Source: Octopus sinensis
Taxonomy: Eukaryota
Assembly: GCF_006345805.1 (NCBI RefSeq)
Contig: NW_021835868.1
Location: 1-38,193, forward strand
Length of the DNA stretch: 38,193 nucleotides
Reading direction: 5' to 3'
The position numbers were made by a program, and so were the translations under genes. Below the pieces are notes generated by a model. The model saw only the letters and a list, made by a program, of their open reading frames with translations. It made no database searches and was not told where the DNA came from. This document shows, piece by piece, positions 401 through 31,688 of the stretch. Numbering within the stretch: position 1 is the first letter of the stretch; each line of letters starts with the position of its first letter.

Positions 401-1299
401 CTATATTGTCATAATAAAAGGGTAAGTTCTCAAGTATCGATGTACGTGTGATCTTTCGTATTTTTCCCTCTATACCTGCGTGAATTATTTGAGTATACAT
501 TGTCTGGGAGACTTTTTTATAGTAGAGGAAATAGCTAAATTTTGGGCTGCTATTTCTAAAAGTTCGGTGTGTGGTAAAGTAAATTATTTTACTGAACCCT
601 AATTATATAACGTAATATATATTTCTATATATATATATTTATACATAAACACACATGTATGCATACACTCGTGCATACACATATACGCACAAACACACAC
701 ACACGCACATATATATATATGTGTGTGTGTATGTGTGTATGTATATATAAGTATGTATGAATGTATAATGCATTTATATATGTATAAGTTGTAAAGATAA
801 TATATGGACACACTATCATGTTTATACTTTAAGAATTACACACTTTACACAATTCGATTTCTCCGCATTTCGGAAGCTACAGAAATACATAACATTGATA
901 AGCTGCAAAAACAGCGAAATGCGCATGTATCATTCGCGCACTTAATTCCGAGCTAGCTTCGTTTCGCCCATTTCTAAAGTATATTCTTATAACAATATGC
1001 TTTAGATGTGTTGAAACACATCACGTCTATAAAGCAATTTTTTCCCGGAAGAAAATTGTAGCTTCTGTATTTTAAACAGTATACATACAATAATTCTGTT
1101 ATGCATACAATGATTCTGTTATGCAGATAAAAAATAATTTGTTATTTTCTTTGCAGATATTTTTATAAATTTTCTGTTTTTACGCGATATATTTGCATTC
1201 ATACCGTACACATTTTATAATACATTCCCACTTGCATAAGCCTCTTGAGTAAATATAAAAATATAATCATCTTTCTATGAAAGATTCTGTTTGATATAC

Positions 1300-2750
1300 T
1301 CCATATCGAATGGCGTTTGAGAATAGTACTTCTTAATATTCATATCTAATTGAATGTGTCCAATAATATCTTATAATATCTTATAATAATTTCCCAGTTG
1401 CACAATGCCTCTATACGCCTGTATTGCTGTATTTGTGGTAAATATAAAATTTCTATATCATACCTTAGCAAGTGTGTTCTAAAAGCAGCCATTAATTTTC
1501 TGATATTTCTCCATAGATCTGCACGTTTATTTTCACCCCGTTGGGAATACTATAATTTGAAATGATTTCAGTGACCTCAACCTTAATGATAATTAGTACC
1601 GTATTATTAGCTTTTAGCTCTGTCTTAATTATCCACCCACCGTATTTTATGTCATATAAGATACAATTTGTCAAAAACAAATGCCTGAAGAAAATCTCTC
1701 TAAGTCCTTATTTACGTGCAGCTACTTTAATACAATTTATGGATCTTTTCGGTTTGAACGGCAGTTTTTAACATCATTTCTAGGTAACTAAAAAAATTTA
1801 AACTTCGTATACTGGTAGAATGGCTTTACTGAGAAAATTCTATAGTTTGTAAGAAATTTGTTTTTTTCCTTCAATTTCTGCAATTTCAACCAATCAGTGA
1901 CGTCTATTGAGTTAAAAAGCATTCTGTGCCGTATGAATATGTCCCTCGTTTAAGAAACAGATTGGGTTTATTTGCATTTTTGAAGAAAAAAGATGCCCTT
2001 CCCCCACCCCTAACCCTAACCTTAACACTAACTAACCCTAACCCTAAAAGAGATTGAAATGCAATAGATCGATTCTAGGGTCATAATTATGGGTGAGAAT
2101 TTCGTATGACAGCGCTAGAAAAAAACTGCCGTTCAAACCGAAAAGATCCCAATTTATTTCAAGCTTCACTGCTCTAACATGTGTTTTTCTCAGTATGTGC
2201 CGCTGAAATGTGGGGCACGTCAAATGGAGCCATCCGTCTTGTTTGCCATCACATACGTTTATTCGCTTCCACTATTCCCTTCTAAAGTTGTCATTCCTTT
2301 GTGTATTCTATTCCATTGATTCCCAAATAATTCCGAGGCTTTGTTTGGCTTAATTCTTTTATCTCAGCTTCTGTATCTATCACGATATCAGTATTCTATT
2401 TGCTGTTGGTGCCGTATTGATTTCTATTATAGTTTTACTGTGTTCTTGAAATCGATTAGGGGCTCAAATTGAACTGCGTGTTTTGTTCAAAGAATCGTTG
2501 GCGTTTTTAATACTAACGGATTCTTTGTAATTTTAGCGAGGACCCCTTGTTTCAAACCTTCTTTGATTTCGGATACATTTTATTATGTAATATTTTTACA
2601 ATATAATATAAAATGCCCCGTTTTTAAGTTATGTCATTCTGTTATTGATTTTATTAACGATTAAACCATTTCCCCTTTATTTTCTAAAGTATATTCTGTA
2701 TATTTCTTTATTTTCCAGTTATAGCTTTGCATTTTTGATATTCGTACTAC
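1300..2750 (-). mobile_element. Degraded non-LTR retrotransposon ORF (R4/Dong-like RLE-type LINE), interrupted by a MITE
   Basis: Minus-strand hand translation, in expected order across stops and frameshifts: 'IKELSQTKPRNYLGI' (~2310-2365; cf. IKEL...YKYLGI), 'IKTELKANN' (~1605-1635; cf. LKTELNAKN), 'DIEILYLP' (~1435-1460; cf. DIERLYLP). Boundaries approximate. Confidence 0.55.
1741..2149. mobile_element. 409-bp non-autonomous DNA transposon (MITE) with 29-bp TIRs and 8-bp TSD; Merlin-like by end signature
   Basis: Perfect TIRs GGATCTTTTCGGTTTGAACGGCAGTTTTT (1741-1769) and its reverse complement (2121-2149); flanking direct repeat CAATTTAT at 1733-1740 and 2150-2157. Superfamily is an inference from GG-starting TIRs plus 8-bp TSD (hAT or P also give 8 bp). 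Confidence 0.88.
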
Positions 2751-5975: not shown

Positions 5976-6704
5976 TACCGGATCGATCCCAAAATCTAAT
6001 CAGTTCGTACCAGTCACCGGGCGAGACATCTCTCATGTTTCATCCGAATCCATCCAGGGACAAACAAGCAAATAAACACGACTGAAAACAATACCATGGA
6101 GGTAAAAATGAACGAATTTAACTAGTAACCCCATAAAATTTGGAGCACATAGTTGAAATGTATTTGGAAAGCAATAAAACCTATTAGAAATGTATCAGAG
6201 TTTTCTAAATGTTATTCAGACGTAAACTTCAAAATATTTATTTGGACAACTGATCGGTCGTTGACTTTCAAACATTAACATCTATTAATAATAAACTGAT
6301 AACCAATCATAGTTTACCAGAAAGAAGTCTGATCGAAAATATTAAATTTTAAACGTTAGGTAAATTACCAATATATATGGTTATTATAAAGTTCATTCAT
6401 AATTCATACGGAAATTGTAATAAATTAGTTCTATATATGGTAAATTTAATCTGTGTGGGAAAAATAAGTGAGAGAATTTATTATTTCTATAACGAGATAT
6501 ATTCTTGAAAATGTTAATTTCCTCTGTGTCCACCGTCGGTAGATATATATGGAACGTGATACCATTCTCGACTACGAAACGTACACCGTGTAGTAGAAAG
6601 AAGAGTGTTTTAGCTTGCATGACGCATTGTGATAAAAAGGCAAAAAATTTAAATATTCCATCTACTAGAGGCACAAGGTCCGAAATATTTGAGGAGGGGC
6701 TAGT

Positions 6705-7061
6705 TGATTAGATCGACCGTCATTACGCGAACGGTACTTAACTTATCGACCCCGAAAAGATGAAAGGCAAAGTCGACCTCGGCGGAATTTGAAATCAGAA
6801 CGTAAATACAGACGAAATACCGCTAAGCATTTCATCCGGGGTGCTAACGTTTCTTATTTCTTTATTGCCCACAAGGGCATAGAGGGGACAAACAAGGACA
6901 GGCAAAGGGATTAATTCGATAACATCGACGCCAGTGCGTAACTGGTACTTAATTTATCGACCCCGAAAGGATGAAAGACAAAGTCGACTTCGGCGGAATT
7001 TGAACTCAGAACGTAACGACAGACGAAATATCGCTAAGTATTTCACCCGGCGTGCTAACGT
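6705..7061 (-). mobile_element. SINE family A, two tandem units
   Basis: Two copies of 'atcgaccccgaaa.gatgaaag.caaagtcgac.tcggcggaatttgaa.tcagaacgtaa' (~6745-6810 and ~6955-7020). Confidence 0.9.
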
Positions 7062-7062
7062 C

Positions 7063-7382
7063 GATAAATGAAGTACCAGTTCGGGATCGATAAATTAAGT
7101 ACCAGTTGCAAACTGGAGTCGATCTAATCGACTACCCCACTCCTCTCACCAAAAATTTTGGACCTTGAGCCTAGAGTAGAAAAGAATCGTTAGCACGCCG
7201 GACGAAATGCTTAGCAGTATTTCGTCTGTCTTCACGTTCTGAATTCGAATGCCACCGGGGTCGACTTTACCTTTCATCCTTTAGGGGTCGATAAATTATG
7301 CACCAGTGAAACACTGGGGTCGAAATAATAACTTAATCCCACCCCTATAATTTCAGGCCTTGTGCCTACAGTAGAAAGGATT
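7063..7382 (+). mobile_element. SINE family A, partial tail plus near-complete unit
   Basis: 'gaatcgttagcacgccggacgaaatgcttagc...gtcgactttacctttcatcctttaggggtcgataaatt...caggccttgtgcc'. Confidence 0.85.
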
Positions 7383-10927: not shown

Positions 10928-11249
10928 TACTCTTACTCTTTTACTTGTTTCAGTCATTTGACTGTGCTCATGCTGGAGCACCGCCTTTTTTAGTTGAGCA
11001 AATCGACCCCAGGACTTATTCTTTGTAAGCCTAGTACTTATTCTATCGGTCTCTTTTGCCGAACCACTAAGTTACGGGGACGTAAACACACCAGCATCGG
11101 TTGTCAAGCGATGTTGGAGGGGGAAAAACACAGACACACAAATATATATATATATATACATAACAAGTATATATACTTATATACGACGGGCTTCTTTCAG
11201 TTTCCGTCTACCAAATCCATTCACAAGGCTTTGGTCGGCAAGAGGCTAA
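10928..11249 (-). mobile_element. SINE family B, 5'-truncated, well preserved
   Basis: Reverse complement of body 'ccttgtgaatggatttggtagacggaaactgaaagaagcccgtcgtata' and of the complete tail through 'gactgaaacaagtaaaagagtaa'. Confidence 0.88.
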
Positions 11250-13290: not shown

Positions 13291-15084
13291 AATGCATTTT
13301 GGCCTTATGCGTGATGTTTATCAAAGTAAGTATGGAAATAATGGTGATACGAATTGTGTTTTTGCAGTAAATAGCATAAAATTAAAGTCGTGAATTAATA
13401 TGAAACTAGATTATGAATATAAGGAATGATACAAATATAATAAGCGGGATAAATATCCTTGAAGAATAGATTTTATTAGAATTACGTAAAGGAAATGTGG
13501 CCTGCATGAATCTCAAATCAGGTGGTCACGAGAAATTATTTAAAATATGAGAATTCAGGCATTTTGGATATGTTGGCGTCTGTGTTTATGTGTGTTTGTA
13601 TCAACGTATGCTTATATGTGGAGGTGCAACGGCTAAGTTGCAGGGACGCAAAAACACCAACAGCGGTTGTCAAGCGGTGGTGGGGATACAAACACAGATA
13701 TAAAAGTTATCGATAGAATAACTAATAGGCTTAAACAAAAAAAGTCCAACTCCTCTGTCAATTTGTTCTACTAAAACACCCTTCAATCTTGTGCCCCAGC
13801 ATGGCCGCAGTCAGATAACTGAAATAAGTAAAAATAAAATGATTAAAGATACACTCACGTACACGTGAATGCTCGGTTCGTTATTCGGAATTGTATTCCG
13901 AACAACGAACCGAGAATCCTCGATATTTTAGTCAGTGGTGAGGTTCTTGAAATAAATATATTATTTTGAACATAAGGCTTATTCGTTCGGAGAAAGAGAG
14001 ACTGGCTTAAAAACCCATTACTTCTTGCTGAAAATATCTACAGGGAATATTCAGCTGTGAACCCCTTACGAAACACCATTCATAATTTGTTTCCATCTTC
14101 AACCATGTCAGACATTTTTATTCGCGTTTTCAACACATACGTGCAGCTTATAGCTTTCCATTTGTTGATGAGAGAAGCGAGGCTATTGCTTCACATGTAG
14201 TCCAAGTTTGGGATTTGCTAATGGAGAGAGCAGTGCTTAGGCCAATTGGGAATTCCGAGCTAGCTGAAATGAAATGGTTTGTCAGACTGAAGATATAAGT
14301 GTTGGGAGGAAGTTTTTTACGTAATGAAATATTTACTAAGCGATTATCATTATACGGTAATATTGACAAAAATGAAAATTTATTGGAAAAAGCCCAAACA
14401 CTTTCTGTTATACGAGAAGTGATTGCCTTTAAAAATTACGCACAATTTTCCGCCGTTTATTTGTTACACGTTTCAGTCTTTGGATTACGACCATGCAGGA
14501 GCACCGTTTTGAAGGGTTTAGCGGAGGAAATCAATCCCAGTACCAATTATTTATTTATTTTACCTATTTATTTAGTTTTAGTGTGACTCTTATTATATAT
14601 CCCTCTCTCTTGCTGAACGGCTATGTTACGATATAATCGACTTAATCTGTTTGTCTGTCTGTGTTTGTCCCCTCTGTGTTTGGCCCCTTGTGGGTAGTAA
14701 AGAAATATATATGCACTTCAAGAGCCTGTACCTGTTGCGGTGCGGAAGTTTGTGTGCCTTACATAACACGAAAGCCATGCCAGTGGAGCACATTCTCCTC
14801 ATAAGGCTTCCTATGCTGGACTTGTCAAAGCATAGAGGCCAGAATATTTGGGCCATCTATTGTCAAATGGGATTTGTGTGGGGGCCAATTTCCCTACATA
14901 AAACCAAGCAAATTTACAGAAGCATCGCTGACAGTTCTAAATCCAAGACTTGAGAGAGGATGACACTCGTTCAGGGAAACATATCACGCAGGGACTCTAA
15001 ATCAGAAACGAAGCTGCGAAGCCAATTCTCCTTGTTGACCACGAAGATAAGAGTTGTACAAGAAGTGGGCGGGTAGTGCGGGTG

Positions 15085-20585: not shown

Positions 20586-20998
20586 TTTCTTTATATTGCC
20601 CACAAGGGGGTTAAATATAAAGGGCACAAACAAAGATAGGCAAACAGACTAAGTCGATTACATCGACCCCAGTCCGTGACTGGTACTTCTTTAATCGACC
20701 CTGAAATGATAAAATGCAAAGTCAACCACGGCGGAATTTGAACTCAGAACGTAAAGACAGACGAAATTCCTATTTCTTTACTACCCACAAGGGGCTAAAC
20801 AGAGAGAGGACAAACATGGACAGACAAACGGATTAAGTCGATTACATCGACCCCAGTGCGCAACTGGTACTTATTTAATCGACCCCGAAAGGATGAAAGG
20901 CAAAGTCGACCATGACGGAATTTGAACTCAGAACGTAACGCCAGACGAAATAGCGCTAAGCATTTCGCCCGACGTGCTAACGTTTCTGCCAGCTCACC
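20586..20998 (-). mobile_element. SINE family A, dimeric (internal tandem duplication)
   Basis: Two core units (~20660-20765 and ~20845-20950); one complete head ending 'ctgccagctcacc'; unit junction 'gaaataggaatttcgtc' on the minus strand. Confidence 0.9.
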
Positions 20999-27196: not shown

Positions 27197-27762
27197 GGCA
27201 GCGAGCTGGCAGAATCATTAGCACGCCGGGAAAAGGCTTAGCGGCATTTCGTCTGCCGTTACGTTCTGAGTTCAAATTCCGCCGAGGTCGACTTTGCCTT
27301 TCATCCTTTCGGGGTCGATAAATTAAGTACCAGTTACGCACTGGGGTCGATGTAATCGACTTAATACCTATGTCTGTCCTTGTTTATCCTCTCTGTGTTT
27401 AGCCCCTTGTGGGTAATAAAGAAATAGGTATTTCGTCTGCCGTGACGTTCTGAGTTCAAATTCCGCCGAGGTCGACTTTGCCTTTCATCCATTCGGGGTC
27501 GATTAAATAAGTACCAGTTACGCACTGGGGTCGATATTATCGGCTTAATCCGTTTGTCTGTCCTTGTTTGTGTCCTCTGTGTTTAGCCCCTTGTGGGGCA
27601 ATGAAGAAATAGGTATTTCTGAGTTCAAATTCCGCCAAGGTCGTCTTTGTCTTCCATCCATTTGGGTCGATAAAGTAAGTAGCTGTTGAACACTGGGTCG
27701 ATGGAACCATCTTAACCCTCCCTTAAACCTGCTGGCCCTGTGCCAAAATTTGAAACCAATAT
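27197..27762 (+). mobile_element. SINE family A, trimeric (one head plus three ~185-bp units)
   Basis: Units restart at ~27244, ~27429 and ~27612; each junction is 'gaaatagg|tatttc'. Confidence 0.9.
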
Positions 27763-28359: not shown

Positions 28360-28572
28360 AATCCTATCCGTGTGTCTTTCAGTCTGTGTTTTTTTCCACC
28401 GCCACCGCTTGACAACCGGTCCTGATATGTTTACTCCCCTCTAGCGGTTCGGCAAAGAGATCGATAGAACAAATGCCAAGTTTTTAAAAAGAGTACTGGT
28501 GTTGATTTGTTCGACTAAATCGTTCAAGGCCTTACCCCAGAATGGCCGCAGTCTACTGACTGAAACAAGAAG
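28155..28572 (+). mobile_element. SINE family B, near full length, internal (TG)n
   Basis: Head 'tggtaagaagcttgcttcc...gggttcagtc', CORE-like 'ctgcgtggaaccttgggtaagtgtcttct', tail '...atggccgcagtctactgactgaaacaag'. Confidence 0.88.
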
Positions 28573-29584: not shown

Positions 29585-29890
29585 CTGTGGTAAGAAGATG
29601 GCTTCTTAACCACATGGTTCCAGGTTCACTCCCACTGCGTGGTACCTTGGGCGAGTGTGTTCTCCTATAGCCTCGAGCCGACCACAACCTTGTGCGTGGA
29701 TTTGGTAGACAGAAATTGAAAAAAGCCCGATGTTGGTGTTTTTACGTCCCCGTAACTTAGCGGATCGGCAAAAGAATCGTTAGAATAAGTACTTGGCTTA
29801 CAAAGAATAAGTTTTGGGGTCGATTTATCAAACACTTTAAGCCGAAGCTCCAGCATGGACGCAATCAAATGACTGAAACACATTGAAAGA
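29585..29890 (+). mobile_element. SINE family B
   Basis: Head 'gtggtaagaag...caggttcactcccactgcgtggtaccttgggcgagtgt', body and tail present. Confidence 0.85.
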
Positions 29891-30780
29891 TATATAAATA
29901 TACATAGTATAAGTACATACGTATAATTATATATATACACACACATGTATGTATCTATATATGTATGTATCTATGTATGTATGTATGCATGTATGTATGT
30001 ATGTATGTATATAAATATATATACACTCCTCCACACTCCAACACCACCACAACACACCACACACCACCACACCACACAACCAAACCATACACCACCACAT
30101 TCCACTCCACCATATCACACCACACCACATCACACCACCCGCACACACTAGCACTAACCACTTTCCAGTACCTACACCATCATCCACACACCTACACATG
30201 CACACACGCACAGGTCAATGTCACCAGCCCCCTTCCACACGCACATACAGGCTCTCGCATACACACACAGGCGCACCTTCGTTTTGAGATCATCACTACT
30301 TTATTATCTCCCCTTCTTCCTAGCTCTCTTGTGTGACCCCTCTGTCTAGCATTCGCCATGACAGATCGCTAGCTACTAAACCTTTTCCTATTTTCTCTCC
30401 CTGTTTATTTATGTGTTCCTTTCTGTCGAAGAGCGTAGGCTCGAAATGTAAAAGACATTCCCAGTTCCCGTGCGTTAAACTAATACATCTGTTTGTTGTT
30501 TACACACCCGTCTTCGTCTTTTGTTTCTTGTAAATTTTCACTATATACATATATATATATATATATAGCAATAATAATTCTCTAAATGAGATATAGACAG
30601 TGACTGCCCCATAATATAAGGGACATTAGCGAACTGAATATGGCTAGGGACAGGGCAGGGTGGTGGGGATGTCACTGTTGCATTTAGCCCCAGGCGAACA
30701 TCAACGTCACCAGATAGGCCGACGCCATCACGGCGTCCTCTATCTTGCAAAGGGAGATCATTCCCCAAGAAGCGGATGCC

Positions 30781-30826
30781 CACACGGACCTAGGTTTCAA
30801 GGTGTATTGCCTATTATCAACGTGTG
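30781..30826 (-). ncRNA. Type I hammerhead ribozyme, U3-A8 variant (inverted copy)
   Basis: Reverse complement: CACACG-UUGAUAA-UAGGCAAUACACCUU-GAAA-CCUAGG-UC-CGUGUG; predicted cut between 30787 and 30786. Confidence 0.8.
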
Positions 30827-31047
30827 GTAGGCACCGCTTTTCGACGAACGACTCACCGTGCAAGATATATATAAAGATTTTCAAGTAAATACATTTACTG
30901 ATTTCGAAAATCTGTTCGACAGTCTATATCTCATTTAGAGAATTATTATTGCTGTCGAACAGATTTTCGAAATCAGTAAATGTATTTACTTGAAAATCTT
31001 TATATATATCTTGCACGGTGAGTCGTTCGTCGAAAAGCGGTGCCTAC

Positions 31048-31093
31048 CACACGTTGATAATAGGCAATACACCTTGAAACCTAGGTCCGTGTG
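31048..31093 (+). ncRNA. Type I hammerhead ribozyme, U3-A8 variant
   Basis: Stem I CACACG 31048-53 with CGUGUG 31088-93; core UUGAUAA 31054-60; stem II AGG/CCU (31062-64 with 31072-74) behind a U.U; GAAA 31076-79; palindrome ACCUAGGU 31079-86; GUC with predicted cut after 31087. Confidence 0.82.
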
Positions 31094-31402
31094 TGGCATC
31101 CGCTTCTTGGGGAATGATCTCCCTTTGCAAGATAGAGGACGCCGTGATGGCGTCGGCCTATCTGGTGACGTTGATGTTCGCCTGGGGCTAAATGCAACAG
31201 TGACACCCCCACCACCCTGCTCTGTCCCTAGCCATATTCAGTTGGCTAATGTCCCTTATATTATGGAGCAGTCACTGTCTATATCTCATTTAGAGAATTA
31301 TTATTGCTGTCGAACAGATTTTCGAAATCAGTAAATGTATTTACTTGAAAATCTTTATATATATCTTGCACGGTGAGTCGTTCGTCGAAAAGCGGTGCCT
31401 AC

Positions 31403-31448
31403 CACACGTTGATAATAGGCAATACACCTTGAAACCTAGGTCCGTGTG
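31403..31448 (+). ncRNA. Type I hammerhead ribozyme, U3-A8 variant (second tandem copy)
   Basis: Identical to 31048-31093 shifted by 355; predicted cut after 31442. Confidence 0.82.
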
Positions 31449-31688
31449 TGGCATCCGCTTCTTGGGGAATGATCTCCCTTTGCAAGATAGAGGACGCCGT
31501 GATGGCGTCGGCCTATCTGGTGACGTTGATGTTCGCCTGGGGCTAAATGCAACAGTGACACCCCCACCACCCTGCCCTGTCCCTAGCCATATTCAGTTGG
31601 CTAATGTCCCTTATATTATATATATATATATATAAACATACGTAATTATATATAGATACTCATACACATCTCTCCCTTTCATTCAATG

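What the first reader, a model, noticed from the sequence alone, without database searches (positions are those of the whole stretch)
30567..31619. Candidate cephalopod retrozyme: 355-nt self-cleaving tandem unit that could yield a circular RNA
Seen: three near-identical copies of a non-coding 355-bp unit, each with one complete type I hammerhead motif; the two forward motifs are exactly one unit apart (predicted cuts after 31087 and 31442). Established: tandem units of a few hundred nt with one type I HHR each define non-LTR retrozymes (newt satellite 2, Schistosoma SM-alpha, cave-cricket and mussel/coral types), whose multimeric transcripts self-cleave into monomers that circularise. Inference: a plus-strand transcript would release monomer 31088-31442. 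Near-identity of the copies implies recent mobility. I do not know of this family being described in octopus, but I could not search.
Basis: partly seen in the sequence, partly recalled or inferred. Interest (0 to 1): 0.93.

Follow-up and report, generated by a model that had tools for sequence, protein, structure and literature searches.

The report
Retrozyme-like repeat with variant hammerhead
A 355-bp non-coding repeat (one inverted and two direct copies inside a TA microsatellite) looks like an animal 'retrozyme' mobile element, but its self-cleaving hammerhead motif is an unusual variant that standard models miss, so RNA cleavage and circle formation are plausible but unproven.

Summary
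The repeat is real: one inverted copy (30567-30922) and two direct copies (30922-31619) of a 355-bp non-coding unit, differing at only 5 positions. The 'complete type I hammerhead' is only partly confirmed. No canonical CUGANGA box exists on either strand, and no Rfam hammerhead model matches, even at E<=10 on 91 nt. The predicted sites hold UUGAUAA-UAGG(CAAUACA)CCUU-GAAAC(CUAG)GUC|CGUGUG. All three helices and 10 of 12 core bases are present; C3-G8 is replaced by the covarying U3-A8, and the base of helix II is a U.U pair. Each deviation has a published precedent: U3-A8 in Schistosoma Penelope-like-element hammerheads, and U.U plus a 2-bp helix III with a palindromic tetraloop in the cleaving axolotl retrozyme Ax353. 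A relaxed descriptor gives <=1e-4 chance hits per unit. A model built only from four published retrozyme ribozymes gives E=0.59 over the whole window and E=0.011 within the array. The unit matches retrozymes in size and GC and is highly structured (z -5.2). The inverted-plus-tandem layout, 44-bp extension and (TA)n target match Penelope-like-element insertions. Activity, circular RNA, copy number and host could not be tested. Verdict: a probable retrozyme-like element with a variant hammerhead, of moderate interest.

The parts
30536..30566 (.). Left flank: (TA)n microsatellite, half of the presumed target site
   Evidence: Sequence read. Joining the two flanks gives one continuous (TA)n tract.
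30567..30922 (-). Inverted full-length copy of the unit (356 nt). It contains the unit-to-unit junction, so it derives from a tandem or circular template.
   Evidence: blastn and alignment, 98.9% identity to the forward copies; inverted repeats I1-I4.
30567..30610 (-). 44-bp extension ('tail') by which the inverted copy runs past the point where the forward array ends
   Evidence: Alignment of the inverted copy to a dimer reference. Compare the 30-40 bp tail of PLE insertions.
30781..30826 (-). Hammerhead-like motif of the inverted copy. Predicted cut on the minus strand between 30787 and 30786. Helix I is 7 bp here because of a single-U deletion.
   Evidence: Descriptor hit; model R1 hit at 10.9 bits, full length; copy differences.
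30781..31093 (.). Head-to-head junction: perfect 142-nt inverted arms (30781-30922 and 30952-31093) around a 29-nt spacer. The two copies meet at 30922 with a 1-nt overlap.
   Evidence: Inverted repeat I3, 100% complementary. Sub-threshold 'miRNA' Rfam hits here are by-products of this palindrome.
30922..31264 (+). Forward copy 1 (343 nt, lacking the first 12 nt of the unit as defined by the right end of the array)
   Evidence: TRF; blastn to dimer reference, 99.7%.
31265..31619 (+). Forward copy 2 (full 355 nt, ending ...CCCTTATATTAT at the microsatellite)
   Evidence: TRF; alignment.
31048..31093 (+). Hammerhead-like motif 1: CACACG-UUGAUAA-UAGG(CAAUACA)CCUU-GAAAC(CUAG)GUC|CGUGUG. Predicted cut after 31087.
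31403..31448 (+). Hammerhead-like motif 2, identical to motif 1. Predicted cut after 31442.
31007..31134 (+). Long imperfect rod (about 45 bp) that extends helix I outward from the motif. The same rod recurs one unit downstream.
   Evidence: MFE folds.
31088..31442 (+). Predicted 355-nt monomer that would be released if both forward motifs cleave
   Evidence: Geometry of the two GUC sites. Fold z-score -5.2, with 0 of 100 shuffles as stable.
31620..31636 (.). Right flank: (AT)n microsatellite, the other half of the presumed target site
   Evidence: Sequence read; joined flanks.

Best explanation
The locus is one insertion of a short (355-nt), non-coding, non-autonomous retroelement of the animal non-LTR retrozyme type. 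It is related to the hammerhead-bearing terminal repeats of Penelope-like elements (PLEs) and is probably mobilised by a PLE reverse transcriptase/endonuclease. Shown: the copy layout, the motif, the fold and the flanks. Inferred: a multimeric or circular RNA of the unit was reverse-transcribed from nicks on both strands of a (TA)n microsatellite. This gave one cDNA of about 1.97 units (forward) and one of about 1.0 unit (inverted), which met head-to-head at 30922. Each unit carries a derived type I hammerhead with a U3-A8 pair in place of C3-G8, a U.U pair at the base of a 3-bp helix II, and a 2-bp helix III with the palindromic tetraloop CUAG. In a plus-strand transcript spanning both forward copies, the two motifs are predicted to pair through ACCUAGGU into a double hammerhead and to cleave, probably slowly, after 31087 and 31442. 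That would release a 355-nt highly self-paired RNA, which a host tRNA ligase could circularise. My confidence that this is a retrozyme/PLE-type retroelement with a hammerhead-derived motif is about 0.75. My confidence that the motif still cleaves is about half of that, which gives the overall figure.
For: 355-bp tandem plus inverted copy at 98.9-99.7% identity. The motif has all three helices, GAAAC and GUC boxes, and 10 of 12 core bases; the two changes sit at the two positions that pair with each other (U3-A8 covariation reported in about 1,300 S. mansoni PLE hammerheads, PMC4209133). The rest of the architecture matches the experimentally cleaving axolotl Ax353 (CUGAUGA-U-GCC-CACUA-GGC-U-GAAAC-ACGU-GUA) and mussel Mg353 helix III (GAAAC-GCGC-GUC) (PMC7229834 text and Supplementary Table 2). 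Descriptor nulls give <=1e-4 per unit. A model built only from four published ribozymes aligns the sites full-length in the predicted register with all pairs standard, ranks 2-4 in the window and E=0.011 within the array, while the other long-period arrays score <=2.5 bits. Two copies cofold into the double hammerhead, -24.6 versus 2 x -10.8 kcal/mol. Unit size, GC of 45% and energy per nt equal those of validated retrozymes, and z is -5.1 to -5.2. An inverted 5'-truncated copy plus partial tandem plus extension, inside (TA)n, is the published PLE insertion signature (bioRxiv 10.1101/2021.04.23.441226). Retrozymes are reported to derive from PLE terminal repeats (bioRxiv 10.64898/2026.07.22.740005).
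Against: No Rfam hammerhead family matches at any threshold. The a-priori model is not significant window-wide (E=0.59), and a solitary non-repeat site scores higher. The canonical CUGANGA box is absent. G10.1-C11.1, highly conserved even in PLE hammerheads, is replaced by U.U. The monomeric hammerhead fold is 6 kcal/mol less stable than an alternative fold. PLE-type minimal hammerheads cleave poorly in vitro. Only one locus with three near-identical copies is available, so there is no covariation and no evidence of dispersal. No relatives were found in any searchable collection. No PLE gene lies in the window. The copy ends do not coincide with the predicted cleavage site.
Confidence: 0.42

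Rival explanations
1. Same kind of element (a PLE-mobilised, retrozyme-derived tandem repeat), but the hammerhead is a catalytically dead relic. The element spreads, or spread, as an uncleaved multimeric transcript, or it is simply a fossil. No monomeric or circular RNA is made.
For: No Rfam hit. Two essential core bases are changed and the conserved G10.1-C11.1 pair is lost. The hammerhead fold is disfavoured in the monomer. Reverse transcription ran through all three predicted cleavage sites, and no copy ends there. Naiad PLEs, which target (TA)n and occur in Octopus, proliferate without any hammerhead.
Against: The two core changes are exactly the pairing partners (U3-A8), while the other 10 core bases and all helices are intact. 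That pattern is expected under selection rather than decay. U.U at this position occurs in a cleaving axolotl ribozyme. The double-hammerhead cofold is favoured. Read-through of the sites is equally expected from a religated circle.
Confidence: 0.33
2. A local DNA-level duplication and inversion (replication slippage, unequal exchange or fold-back repair) of a structured non-coding sequence next to an unstable (TA)n tract. The hammerhead resemblance is coincidental.
For: Only a single locus is available, and there is no other copy in 38 kb. The window-wide model E-value is 0.59 and a better-scoring solitary site exists. AT-rich boxes such as UUGAUAA and GAAA are easy to find in a 64% AT genome. 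(TA)n tracts are fragile.
Against: The full motif is expected <=1e-4 times per unit under composition-preserving nulls. It sits precisely at the apex of a 45-bp rod, and the unit's fold has z -5.2. The size, GC and tandem plus inverted layout all match a known element class. Microsatellite flanks on both sides have p of about 0.045 for a random site.
Confidence: 0.1
3. A foldback or MITE-type DNA transposon with long (about 312-bp) inverted arms (30611-30922 and 31308-31619) inserted at a TA target.
For: Long inverted arms at 98-99% (I1, I2). TA-rich flanks are compatible with a TA target-site duplication.
Against: The actual termini are not inverted repeats of each other, because the left end extends 44 bp beyond the right-end homology. 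The spacer between the arms is itself another copy of the same unit. There are no short terminal inverted repeats and no transposase. This model explains neither the tandem junction nor the hammerhead-like motif.
Confidence: 0.05
4. An assembly artefact: a collapsed, expanded or chimeric palindromic read in a repeat-rich region.
For: PLE-type tandem/inverted structures are reported to cause assembly problems. A perfect 142-nt palindrome lies at the junction.
Against: The inverted copy carries four private differences from the forward copies, and the forward copies differ from each other at one site. The structure is bounded precisely by microsatellite on both sides.
Confidence: 0.04

Closest known systems
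Metazoan non-LTR retrozymes (Cervera & de la Pena 2020, PMC7229834), especially mussel Mg353 and axolotl Ax353 (HHR_Amex2)
   Same: Non-coding tandem unit of about 350 nt with GC <50%. One type I-topology hammerhead per unit, with a 6-bp helix I opening into a long self-paired rod. Helix III of 2 bp plus a palindromic tetraloop, as in Mg353 and Ax353. A U.U pair at the base of a 3-bp helix II, as in Ax353. Predicted to work as a dimer.
   Different: The core box is UUGAUAA, not CUGAUGA. There is no sequence similarity outside the motif. Only 2 direct copies plus 1 inverted copy are seen at one locus. Expression, cleavage and circularity are untested. The fold z-score is more extreme (-5.1 versus -0.8 to -3.0).
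Hammerhead variants of Penelope-like elements, including the U3-A8 covariant family of Schistosoma mansoni Cercyon (Cervera & de la Pena 2014, PMC4209133)
   Same: U3-A8 in place of C3-G8. Palindromic helix III/loop 3 implying dimeric action. Motifs found in tandem or on opposite strands a few hundred bp apart.
   Different: PLE min-HHRs usually lack helix III, have a long helix II (6-8 bp), a short helix I and a conserved G10.1-C11.1. Here helix III is present, helix II is short with U.U, and helix I is 6 bp plus a long extension. No RT/EN ORF lies between or near the copies.
PLE insertion architecture (Craig, Yushenova, Rodriguez & Arkhipova 2021), notably (TA)n-targeting Naiad elements reported in Octopus spp.
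   Same: An inverted 5'-truncated copy abutting a partial direct tandem. An extension on one end only. Insertion into a (TA)n microsatellite that hides any target-site duplication.
   Different: The element is 355 nt and non-coding rather than a 3-4 kb RT/EN element. The extension is 44 bp rather than 30-40 bp. Naiads themselves lack hammerheads.
Newt satellite 2 and Schistosoma SM-alpha hammerhead satellites
   Same: [quoted passage not shown] Weak helix III and dimeric cleavage in the newt (literature cited).
   Different: Those carry the canonical CUGANGA core and occur in very large arrays or copy numbers. Neither is shown here.

Membership tests
Metazoan non-LTR retrozyme | Short tandem repeat, monomer about 150-450 bp, at least a dimer | tested here: met
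   355-bp period, 2.0 direct copies at 99%, plus one inverted copy.
Metazoan non-LTR retrozyme | Low GC (<50%), non-coding, no LTR/PBS/PPT | tested here: met
   GC 45.4%. Only a spurious 114-131-aa open frame, with no Pfam hit and no homologue.
Metazoan non-LTR retrozyme | Each of at least 2 consecutive units carries a complete type I hammerhead with the conserved catalytic centre CUGANGA / GAAAY / RUH | tested here: not met
   GAAAC and GUC are present and 355 nt apart in both units, but the first box is UUGAUAA. There is no CUGANGA on either strand and no Rfam hammerhead hit.
Metazoan non-LTR retrozyme | Monomer RNA predicted to be highly self-paired | tested here: met
   MFE -118.5 kcal/mol, z -5.18, 0 of 100 shuffles as stable. 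The circular fold has z -5.1 to -5.4.
Metazoan non-LTR retrozyme | Self-cleavage of transcripts; linear and circular monomer RNAs in tissues | not testable with these tools
   Needs in vitro transcription, northern blots or RNA-seq.
Metazoan non-LTR retrozyme | Many dispersed copies or arrays in the genome, co-occurring with PLEs | not testable with these tools
   No host genome is searchable. There is no other copy in the 38-kb window and none in the metagenome, viral or prokaryote collections.
Type I hammerhead ribozyme (Rfam Hammerhead_1 and related models) | Score at or above the family gathering threshold | tested here: not met
   No hammerhead family is reported at gathering score or at E<=10, even on a 91-nt stretch.
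Type I hammerhead ribozyme (Rfam Hammerhead_1 and related models) | Three helices around the core with helix I open; core C3 U4 G5 A6 N7 G8 A9 / G12 A13 A14 / A15.1-U16.1 / H17 | tested here: inconclusive
   The topology and 10 of 12 specified core bases are present. C3 to U and G8 to A are the two mutually pairing positions, and 10.1/11.1 is U.U. The model from four published ribozymes gives 10.9 bits, E=0.59 window-wide and E=0.011 within the array.
PLE-associated hammerhead | Located in the terminal repeats (pLTRs) of an element encoding RT and GIY-YIG endonuclease | tested here: inconclusive
   No long ORF, and no Pfam hit among the ten longest non-repetitive open stretches of the window. 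Decayed or intron-split genes were not excluded.
PLE-associated hammerhead | Palindromic positions 15.2-16.2 / loop 3, allowing a dimeric ribozyme | tested here: met
   ACCUAGGU is a perfect palindrome. The self-duplex is -12.8 kcal/mol, and the two-copy cofold adopts the double hammerhead.
PLE-associated hammerhead | Conserved G10.1-C11.1 pair | tested here: not met
   U.U at this position. The precedent is axolotl HHR_Amex2, not PLEs.
PLE-type insertion | Inverted 5'-truncated copy adjacent to a partial direct tandem; extension of 30-40 bp on one end; microsatellite target | tested here: met
   Inverted copy 30567-30922 abuts direct copies 30922-31619. There is a 44-bp one-sided extension, and (TA)n lies on both flanks. 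The features are as described. The extension is slightly longer than the published range.

The most novel reading that the evidence does not exclude
This is an active retrozyme family whose ribozyme uses a U3-A8 core pair plus a U.U helix II base within a full three-helix type I hammerhead. It lives in a cephalopod and is mobilised by (TA)n-targeting Naiad-type PLEs that have no hammerhead of their own. The locus would then be a near-pristine fossil of twin-primed, rolling-circle reverse transcription of a circular RNA. That would give direct structural evidence for how retrozymes integrate and which PLE clade they parasitise.
Probability: 0.12. Interest if true: 0.6.

Novelty: new variant of a known kind. 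Interest (0 to 1): 0.35.

Why it matters
If the motif cleaves, it would extend animal retrozymes to another lineage; the library search found no relevant paper linking retrozymes or hammerheads with cephalopods. It would also show that a U3-A8 core, so far reported bioinformatically in PLE minimal hammerheads, can operate in a full tandem retrozyme. Independently of catalysis, the locus is a clean example of a very short element integrated with the inverted-plus-tandem, microsatellite-targeted signature of Penelope-like elements. That supports the recent proposal that animal retrozymes are non-autonomous PLE derivatives. It also shows that Rfam-based or CUGANGA-based screens would miss such elements.

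Tried and rejected
1. Rfam scans at gathering score and at E<=10 on 1.4 kb and on 91 nt found no ribozyme family. The only hits were sub-threshold 'miRNA' matches caused by the head-to-head palindrome and by (TA)n.
2. A search for a canonical CUGANGA box on both strands found none in the array.
3. The search for relatives found nothing. I tried a protein search with the unit's 114-aa open frame and exact-pattern scans of the metagenome (2 patterns), viral and prokaryote-genome collections. These collections hold no cephalopod genomes, so this says nothing about copy number in the host.
4. Host identification via a SINE-like ORF gave no hit, and ARAGORN found no tRNA-like gene. The cephalopod origin remains unverified.
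5. A Pfam scan of the ten longest non-repetitive open stretches found nothing, so no PLE RT/EN was detected nearby.
6. blastn of the unit against the four published retrozymes gave only chance-level matches.
7. A covariation analysis was not possible, because the three copies differ at 5 sites and none is in the core.
8. Lunse et al. 2017 (PLE hammerhead variants cleave as dimers) is not held in the library. I found no kinetic data for U3-A8 in the accessible papers.
9. The foldback/MITE reading was rejected because the termini are offset by 44 bp and the spacer is itself another unit.
Full report
**The observation**

Tandem Repeats Finder reports a 355-bp period at 30922-31619, with 2.0 copies and 99% matches. 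The repeat finder and blastn show a third copy in inverted orientation at 30567-30922. Aligned in one frame, the three copies differ at only five positions:
- a single-U indel (30781 versus 31094/31449);
- four substitutions (30669, 31221, 30631, and G/A at the unit junction).

The unit has no other copy in the 38-kb window. It has no credible coding capacity. Its one 114-131-aa open frame has no Pfam hit and no homologue.

**Anatomy**

I define the unit by where the forward array ends (...CCCTTATATTAT at 31619). On that definition the forward part has two pieces:
- a copy lacking its first 12 nt (30922-31264, 343 nt);
- a full copy (31265-31619, 355 nt).

The inverted copy, read on the minus strand, starts at 30922 and runs 356 nt to 30567. 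It crosses the unit-to-unit junction (...TTATATTAT|GGGGCAG...). It ends 44 nt beyond the point where the forward array stops. Both orientations therefore derive from a tandem or circular template, not from a single linear unit.

The two orientations meet head-to-head at 30922 with a 1-nt overlap. This creates perfect 142-nt inverted arms around a 29-nt spacer (I3). The sub-threshold 'miRNA' matches that Rfam returns here are by-products of this palindrome.

The whole 1,053-bp block is bounded by (TA)n on the left (30536-30566) and (AT)n on the right (31620-31636). Joining the flanks gives one uninterrupted TA microsatellite.

**The hammerhead claim**

- No Rfam family, hammerhead or other ribozyme, matches at gathering score over the window.
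- None matches at E<=10 over 1.4 kb, or at E<=10 over a 91-nt stretch centred on the site.
- There is no CUGANGA box on either strand of 30567-31619.

What lies at the predicted sites is:

5'-CACACG UUGAUAA U-AGG CAAUACA CCU-U GAAA-C CUAG G-UC | CGUGUG-3'

The parts of this motif are:
- a 6-bp helix I (7 bp in the inverted copy);
- a helix II of three Watson-Crick pairs on top of a U.U pair, closed by a 7-nt loop;
- the GAAA box;
- a helix III of A15.1-U16.1 and C-G, closed by the palindromic tetraloop CUAG;
- the cleavage triplet GUC.

Of the 12 specified core positions (consensus quoted in PMC7151607), 10 are canonical. The two exceptions are C3 to U and G8 to A. These are the two core bases that pair with each other.

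**Precedents**

Each deviation is documented in the literature.
[quoted passage not shown] A descriptor with that core retrieved about 1,300 motifs. They also stress palindromic helix III/loop 3, action as dimers, and low cleavage in vitro.
[quoted passage not shown] It cleaves 22% per hour as a monomer and much better as a dimer.
- Their Supplementary Table 2 gives the cleaving constructs. Ax353 reads CUGAUGA-U-GCC-CACUA-GGC-U-GAAAC-ACGU-GUA|. The mussel Mg353 helix III reads GAAAC-GCGC-GUC|.

Apart from U3-A8, the motif here has the same architecture as Ax353.

**Is it more than chance?**

I ran two kinds of test.

The first is post hoc. I wrote a descriptor with these requirements:
- either CUGANGA or its covariant UUGANAA;
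- helix II of at least 3 bp, with at most one extra nucleotide on either side;
- the GAAA box;
- helix III of at least 2 bp;
- UH at the cleavage site;
- helix I of at least 5 bp.

It finds exactly the three predicted sites plus one AT-rich site at 14363-14405. The expected counts are as follows:

| Null | Hits |
|---|---|
| Dinucleotide shuffles of the window | 0.003 per 38 kb |
| Block shuffles preserving local composition | 0-0.01 per 37 kb |
| Reversed window | 0 |
| 43,000 shuffles of the unit | 0 |

The second test is a priori. I built a covariance model (R1) only from the four published cleaving retrozyme hammerheads.
- Over the whole window with filters off, the three sites rank 2-4. 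They align over all 44 model positions in the predicted register, with every pair standard. They score only 10.9 bits, E=0.59.
- A solitary site at 889-933 scores higher, at 14.2 bits and E=0.063.
- Following the published pipeline of tandem repeats first and hammerheads inside them second, the 355-bp array gives E=0.011.
- The two other long-period arrays give nothing above 2.5 bits.

These E-values are rough by the tool's own statement. Together the tests make a chance origin unlikely, but they do not prove a ribozyme.

**Folding**

The 355-nt monomer (31088-31442) folds to -118.5 kcal/mol with z = -5.18, and none of 100 shuffles is as stable. As a circle, z is -5.1 to -5.4. Helix I continues outward as an imperfect rod of about 45 bp, with the motif at its apex.

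On its own, the 46-nt domain prefers an alternative fold (-10.8 kcal/mol) over the hammerhead fold (-4.6). Two copies together prefer the double hammerhead, with an 8-bp intermolecular helix III (ACCUAGGU, -12.8 kcal/mol) and a total of -24.6 versus 2 x -10.8. This is the behaviour described for newt, axolotl and PLE hammerheads: cleavage in multimers and quiescence in the monomer.

Benchmarks against the four validated retrozymes:

| Property | This unit | Validated retrozymes |
|---|---|---|
| Size | 355 nt | 224-353 nt |
| GC | 45.4% | 37-57% |
| Circular MFE per nt | -0.323 | -0.21 to -0.41 |
| Fold z-score | -5.1 | -0.8 to -3.0 |

blastn finds no sequence similarity to any of the four.

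**Integration signature**

Craig et al. [quoted passage not shown] They also describe a 30-40 bp 'tail' on one end, and a strong bias for microsatellites, '(TA)n in Naiads'. Naiad families are present in Octopus spp. but lack hammerheads.

The locus matches on every point, except that the extension is 44 bp. About 4.5% of the window is perfect (TA)n, so a random site would lie in such a tract with p of about 0.045.

Li et al. (2026) report that retrozymes co-occur with PLEs and are sister to PLE terminal repeats. Recently active PLE insertions are reported in Octopus vulgaris.

My inference is two target-primed reverse transcriptions, one from each nicked strand of the microsatellite, on a multimeric or circular template, with the two cDNAs joined in the middle. 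Reverse transcription passed through all three predicted cleavage sites, and no copy ends at one. The template was therefore either religated (circular) or uncleaved. The data cannot tell which.

**What could not be done**

No relatives were found by any route.
- The protein search with the unit's open frame found nothing.
- Two metagenome pattern scans, one viral scan and one prokaryote-genome scan found nothing.
- An attempt to identify the host through a SINE-like ORF failed.

The window holds no tRNA gene and no Pfam-recognisable gene. The cephalopod origin, the copy number and any covariation are therefore untested. The library search found no relevant paper linking retrozymes or hammerheads with cephalopods.

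**Verdict**

The repeat is real, and the element most likely belongs to the retrozyme/PLE world. I put that at about 0.75. The hammerhead is a variant, not a canonical motif.

The pattern of changes is two substitutions at mutually pairing core positions with everything else intact. That favours a still-functional, probably slow, dimer-dependent ribozyme. A dead relic is nearly as likely.

If the octopus calibration in PMC13282606 applied (a distance of 0.09 for about 25 My), the 0.3-1.1% divergence between copies would date the event to roughly 0.5-2 My. This is a rough inference only, and it may reflect a single event rather than ongoing mobility.

This is a new variant of a known kind and is moderately interesting.

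Noticed in passing
window 889-933 (+): A solitary hammerhead-like motif that also has a UUGAUAA box: AUAACA-UUGAUAA-GCUG(CAAAAA)CAGC-GAAAU(GCGC)AUG-UAUCAU. It is the top hit of the published-retrozyme model (14.2 bits, E=0.063). However, it has G at position 17 and two helix I mismatches, and it is not in any repeat. It may be a decayed PLE-type relic or a chance match.
   Followed up: partly
window 14357-14411 (+): A second solitary, AT-rich match to the covariant-core descriptor (UUGACAA ... GAAA ... UC|UGUUAU), where shuffles predict 0.003-0.01 hits. It is probably a chance match in AT-rich sequence. It lies next to a dispersed repeat shared with 29830-29879, 10941-11024 and 28493-28566.
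   Followed up: partly
window 20599-20951 and 27246-27619 (also about 6700-7070): Tandem dimers (period 184 bp, 84-91% matches) of one SINE-like family in opposite orientations. They contain a B-box-like GAGTTCAAATTCCGCC segment. ARAGORN calls no tRNA, and the hammerhead model finds nothing in them.
   Followed up: partly
window 2008-2047: A short interstitial telomere-like (CCCTAA)7 tract, i.e. TTAGGG on the other strand.
   Followed up: no
window 30839-31035: Sub-threshold Rfam 'miRNA precursor' matches (MIR8562, MIR7993 and others, E down to 6e-15 but far below gathering scores). They are caused by the perfect 142-nt head-to-head palindrome. Read-through transcription would give a long dsRNA hairpin, a possible small-RNA source.
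   Followed up: partly
whole window: The microsatellite load is very high (83 TRF rows). Perfect (TA)>=5 runs cover about 4.5% of the window. There are long (TA)n, (ATA)n, (TTC)n, (TAGA)n and (ATGG)n tracts, 35.6% GC, and no recognisable protein-coding sequence in 38 kb.
   Followed up: partly
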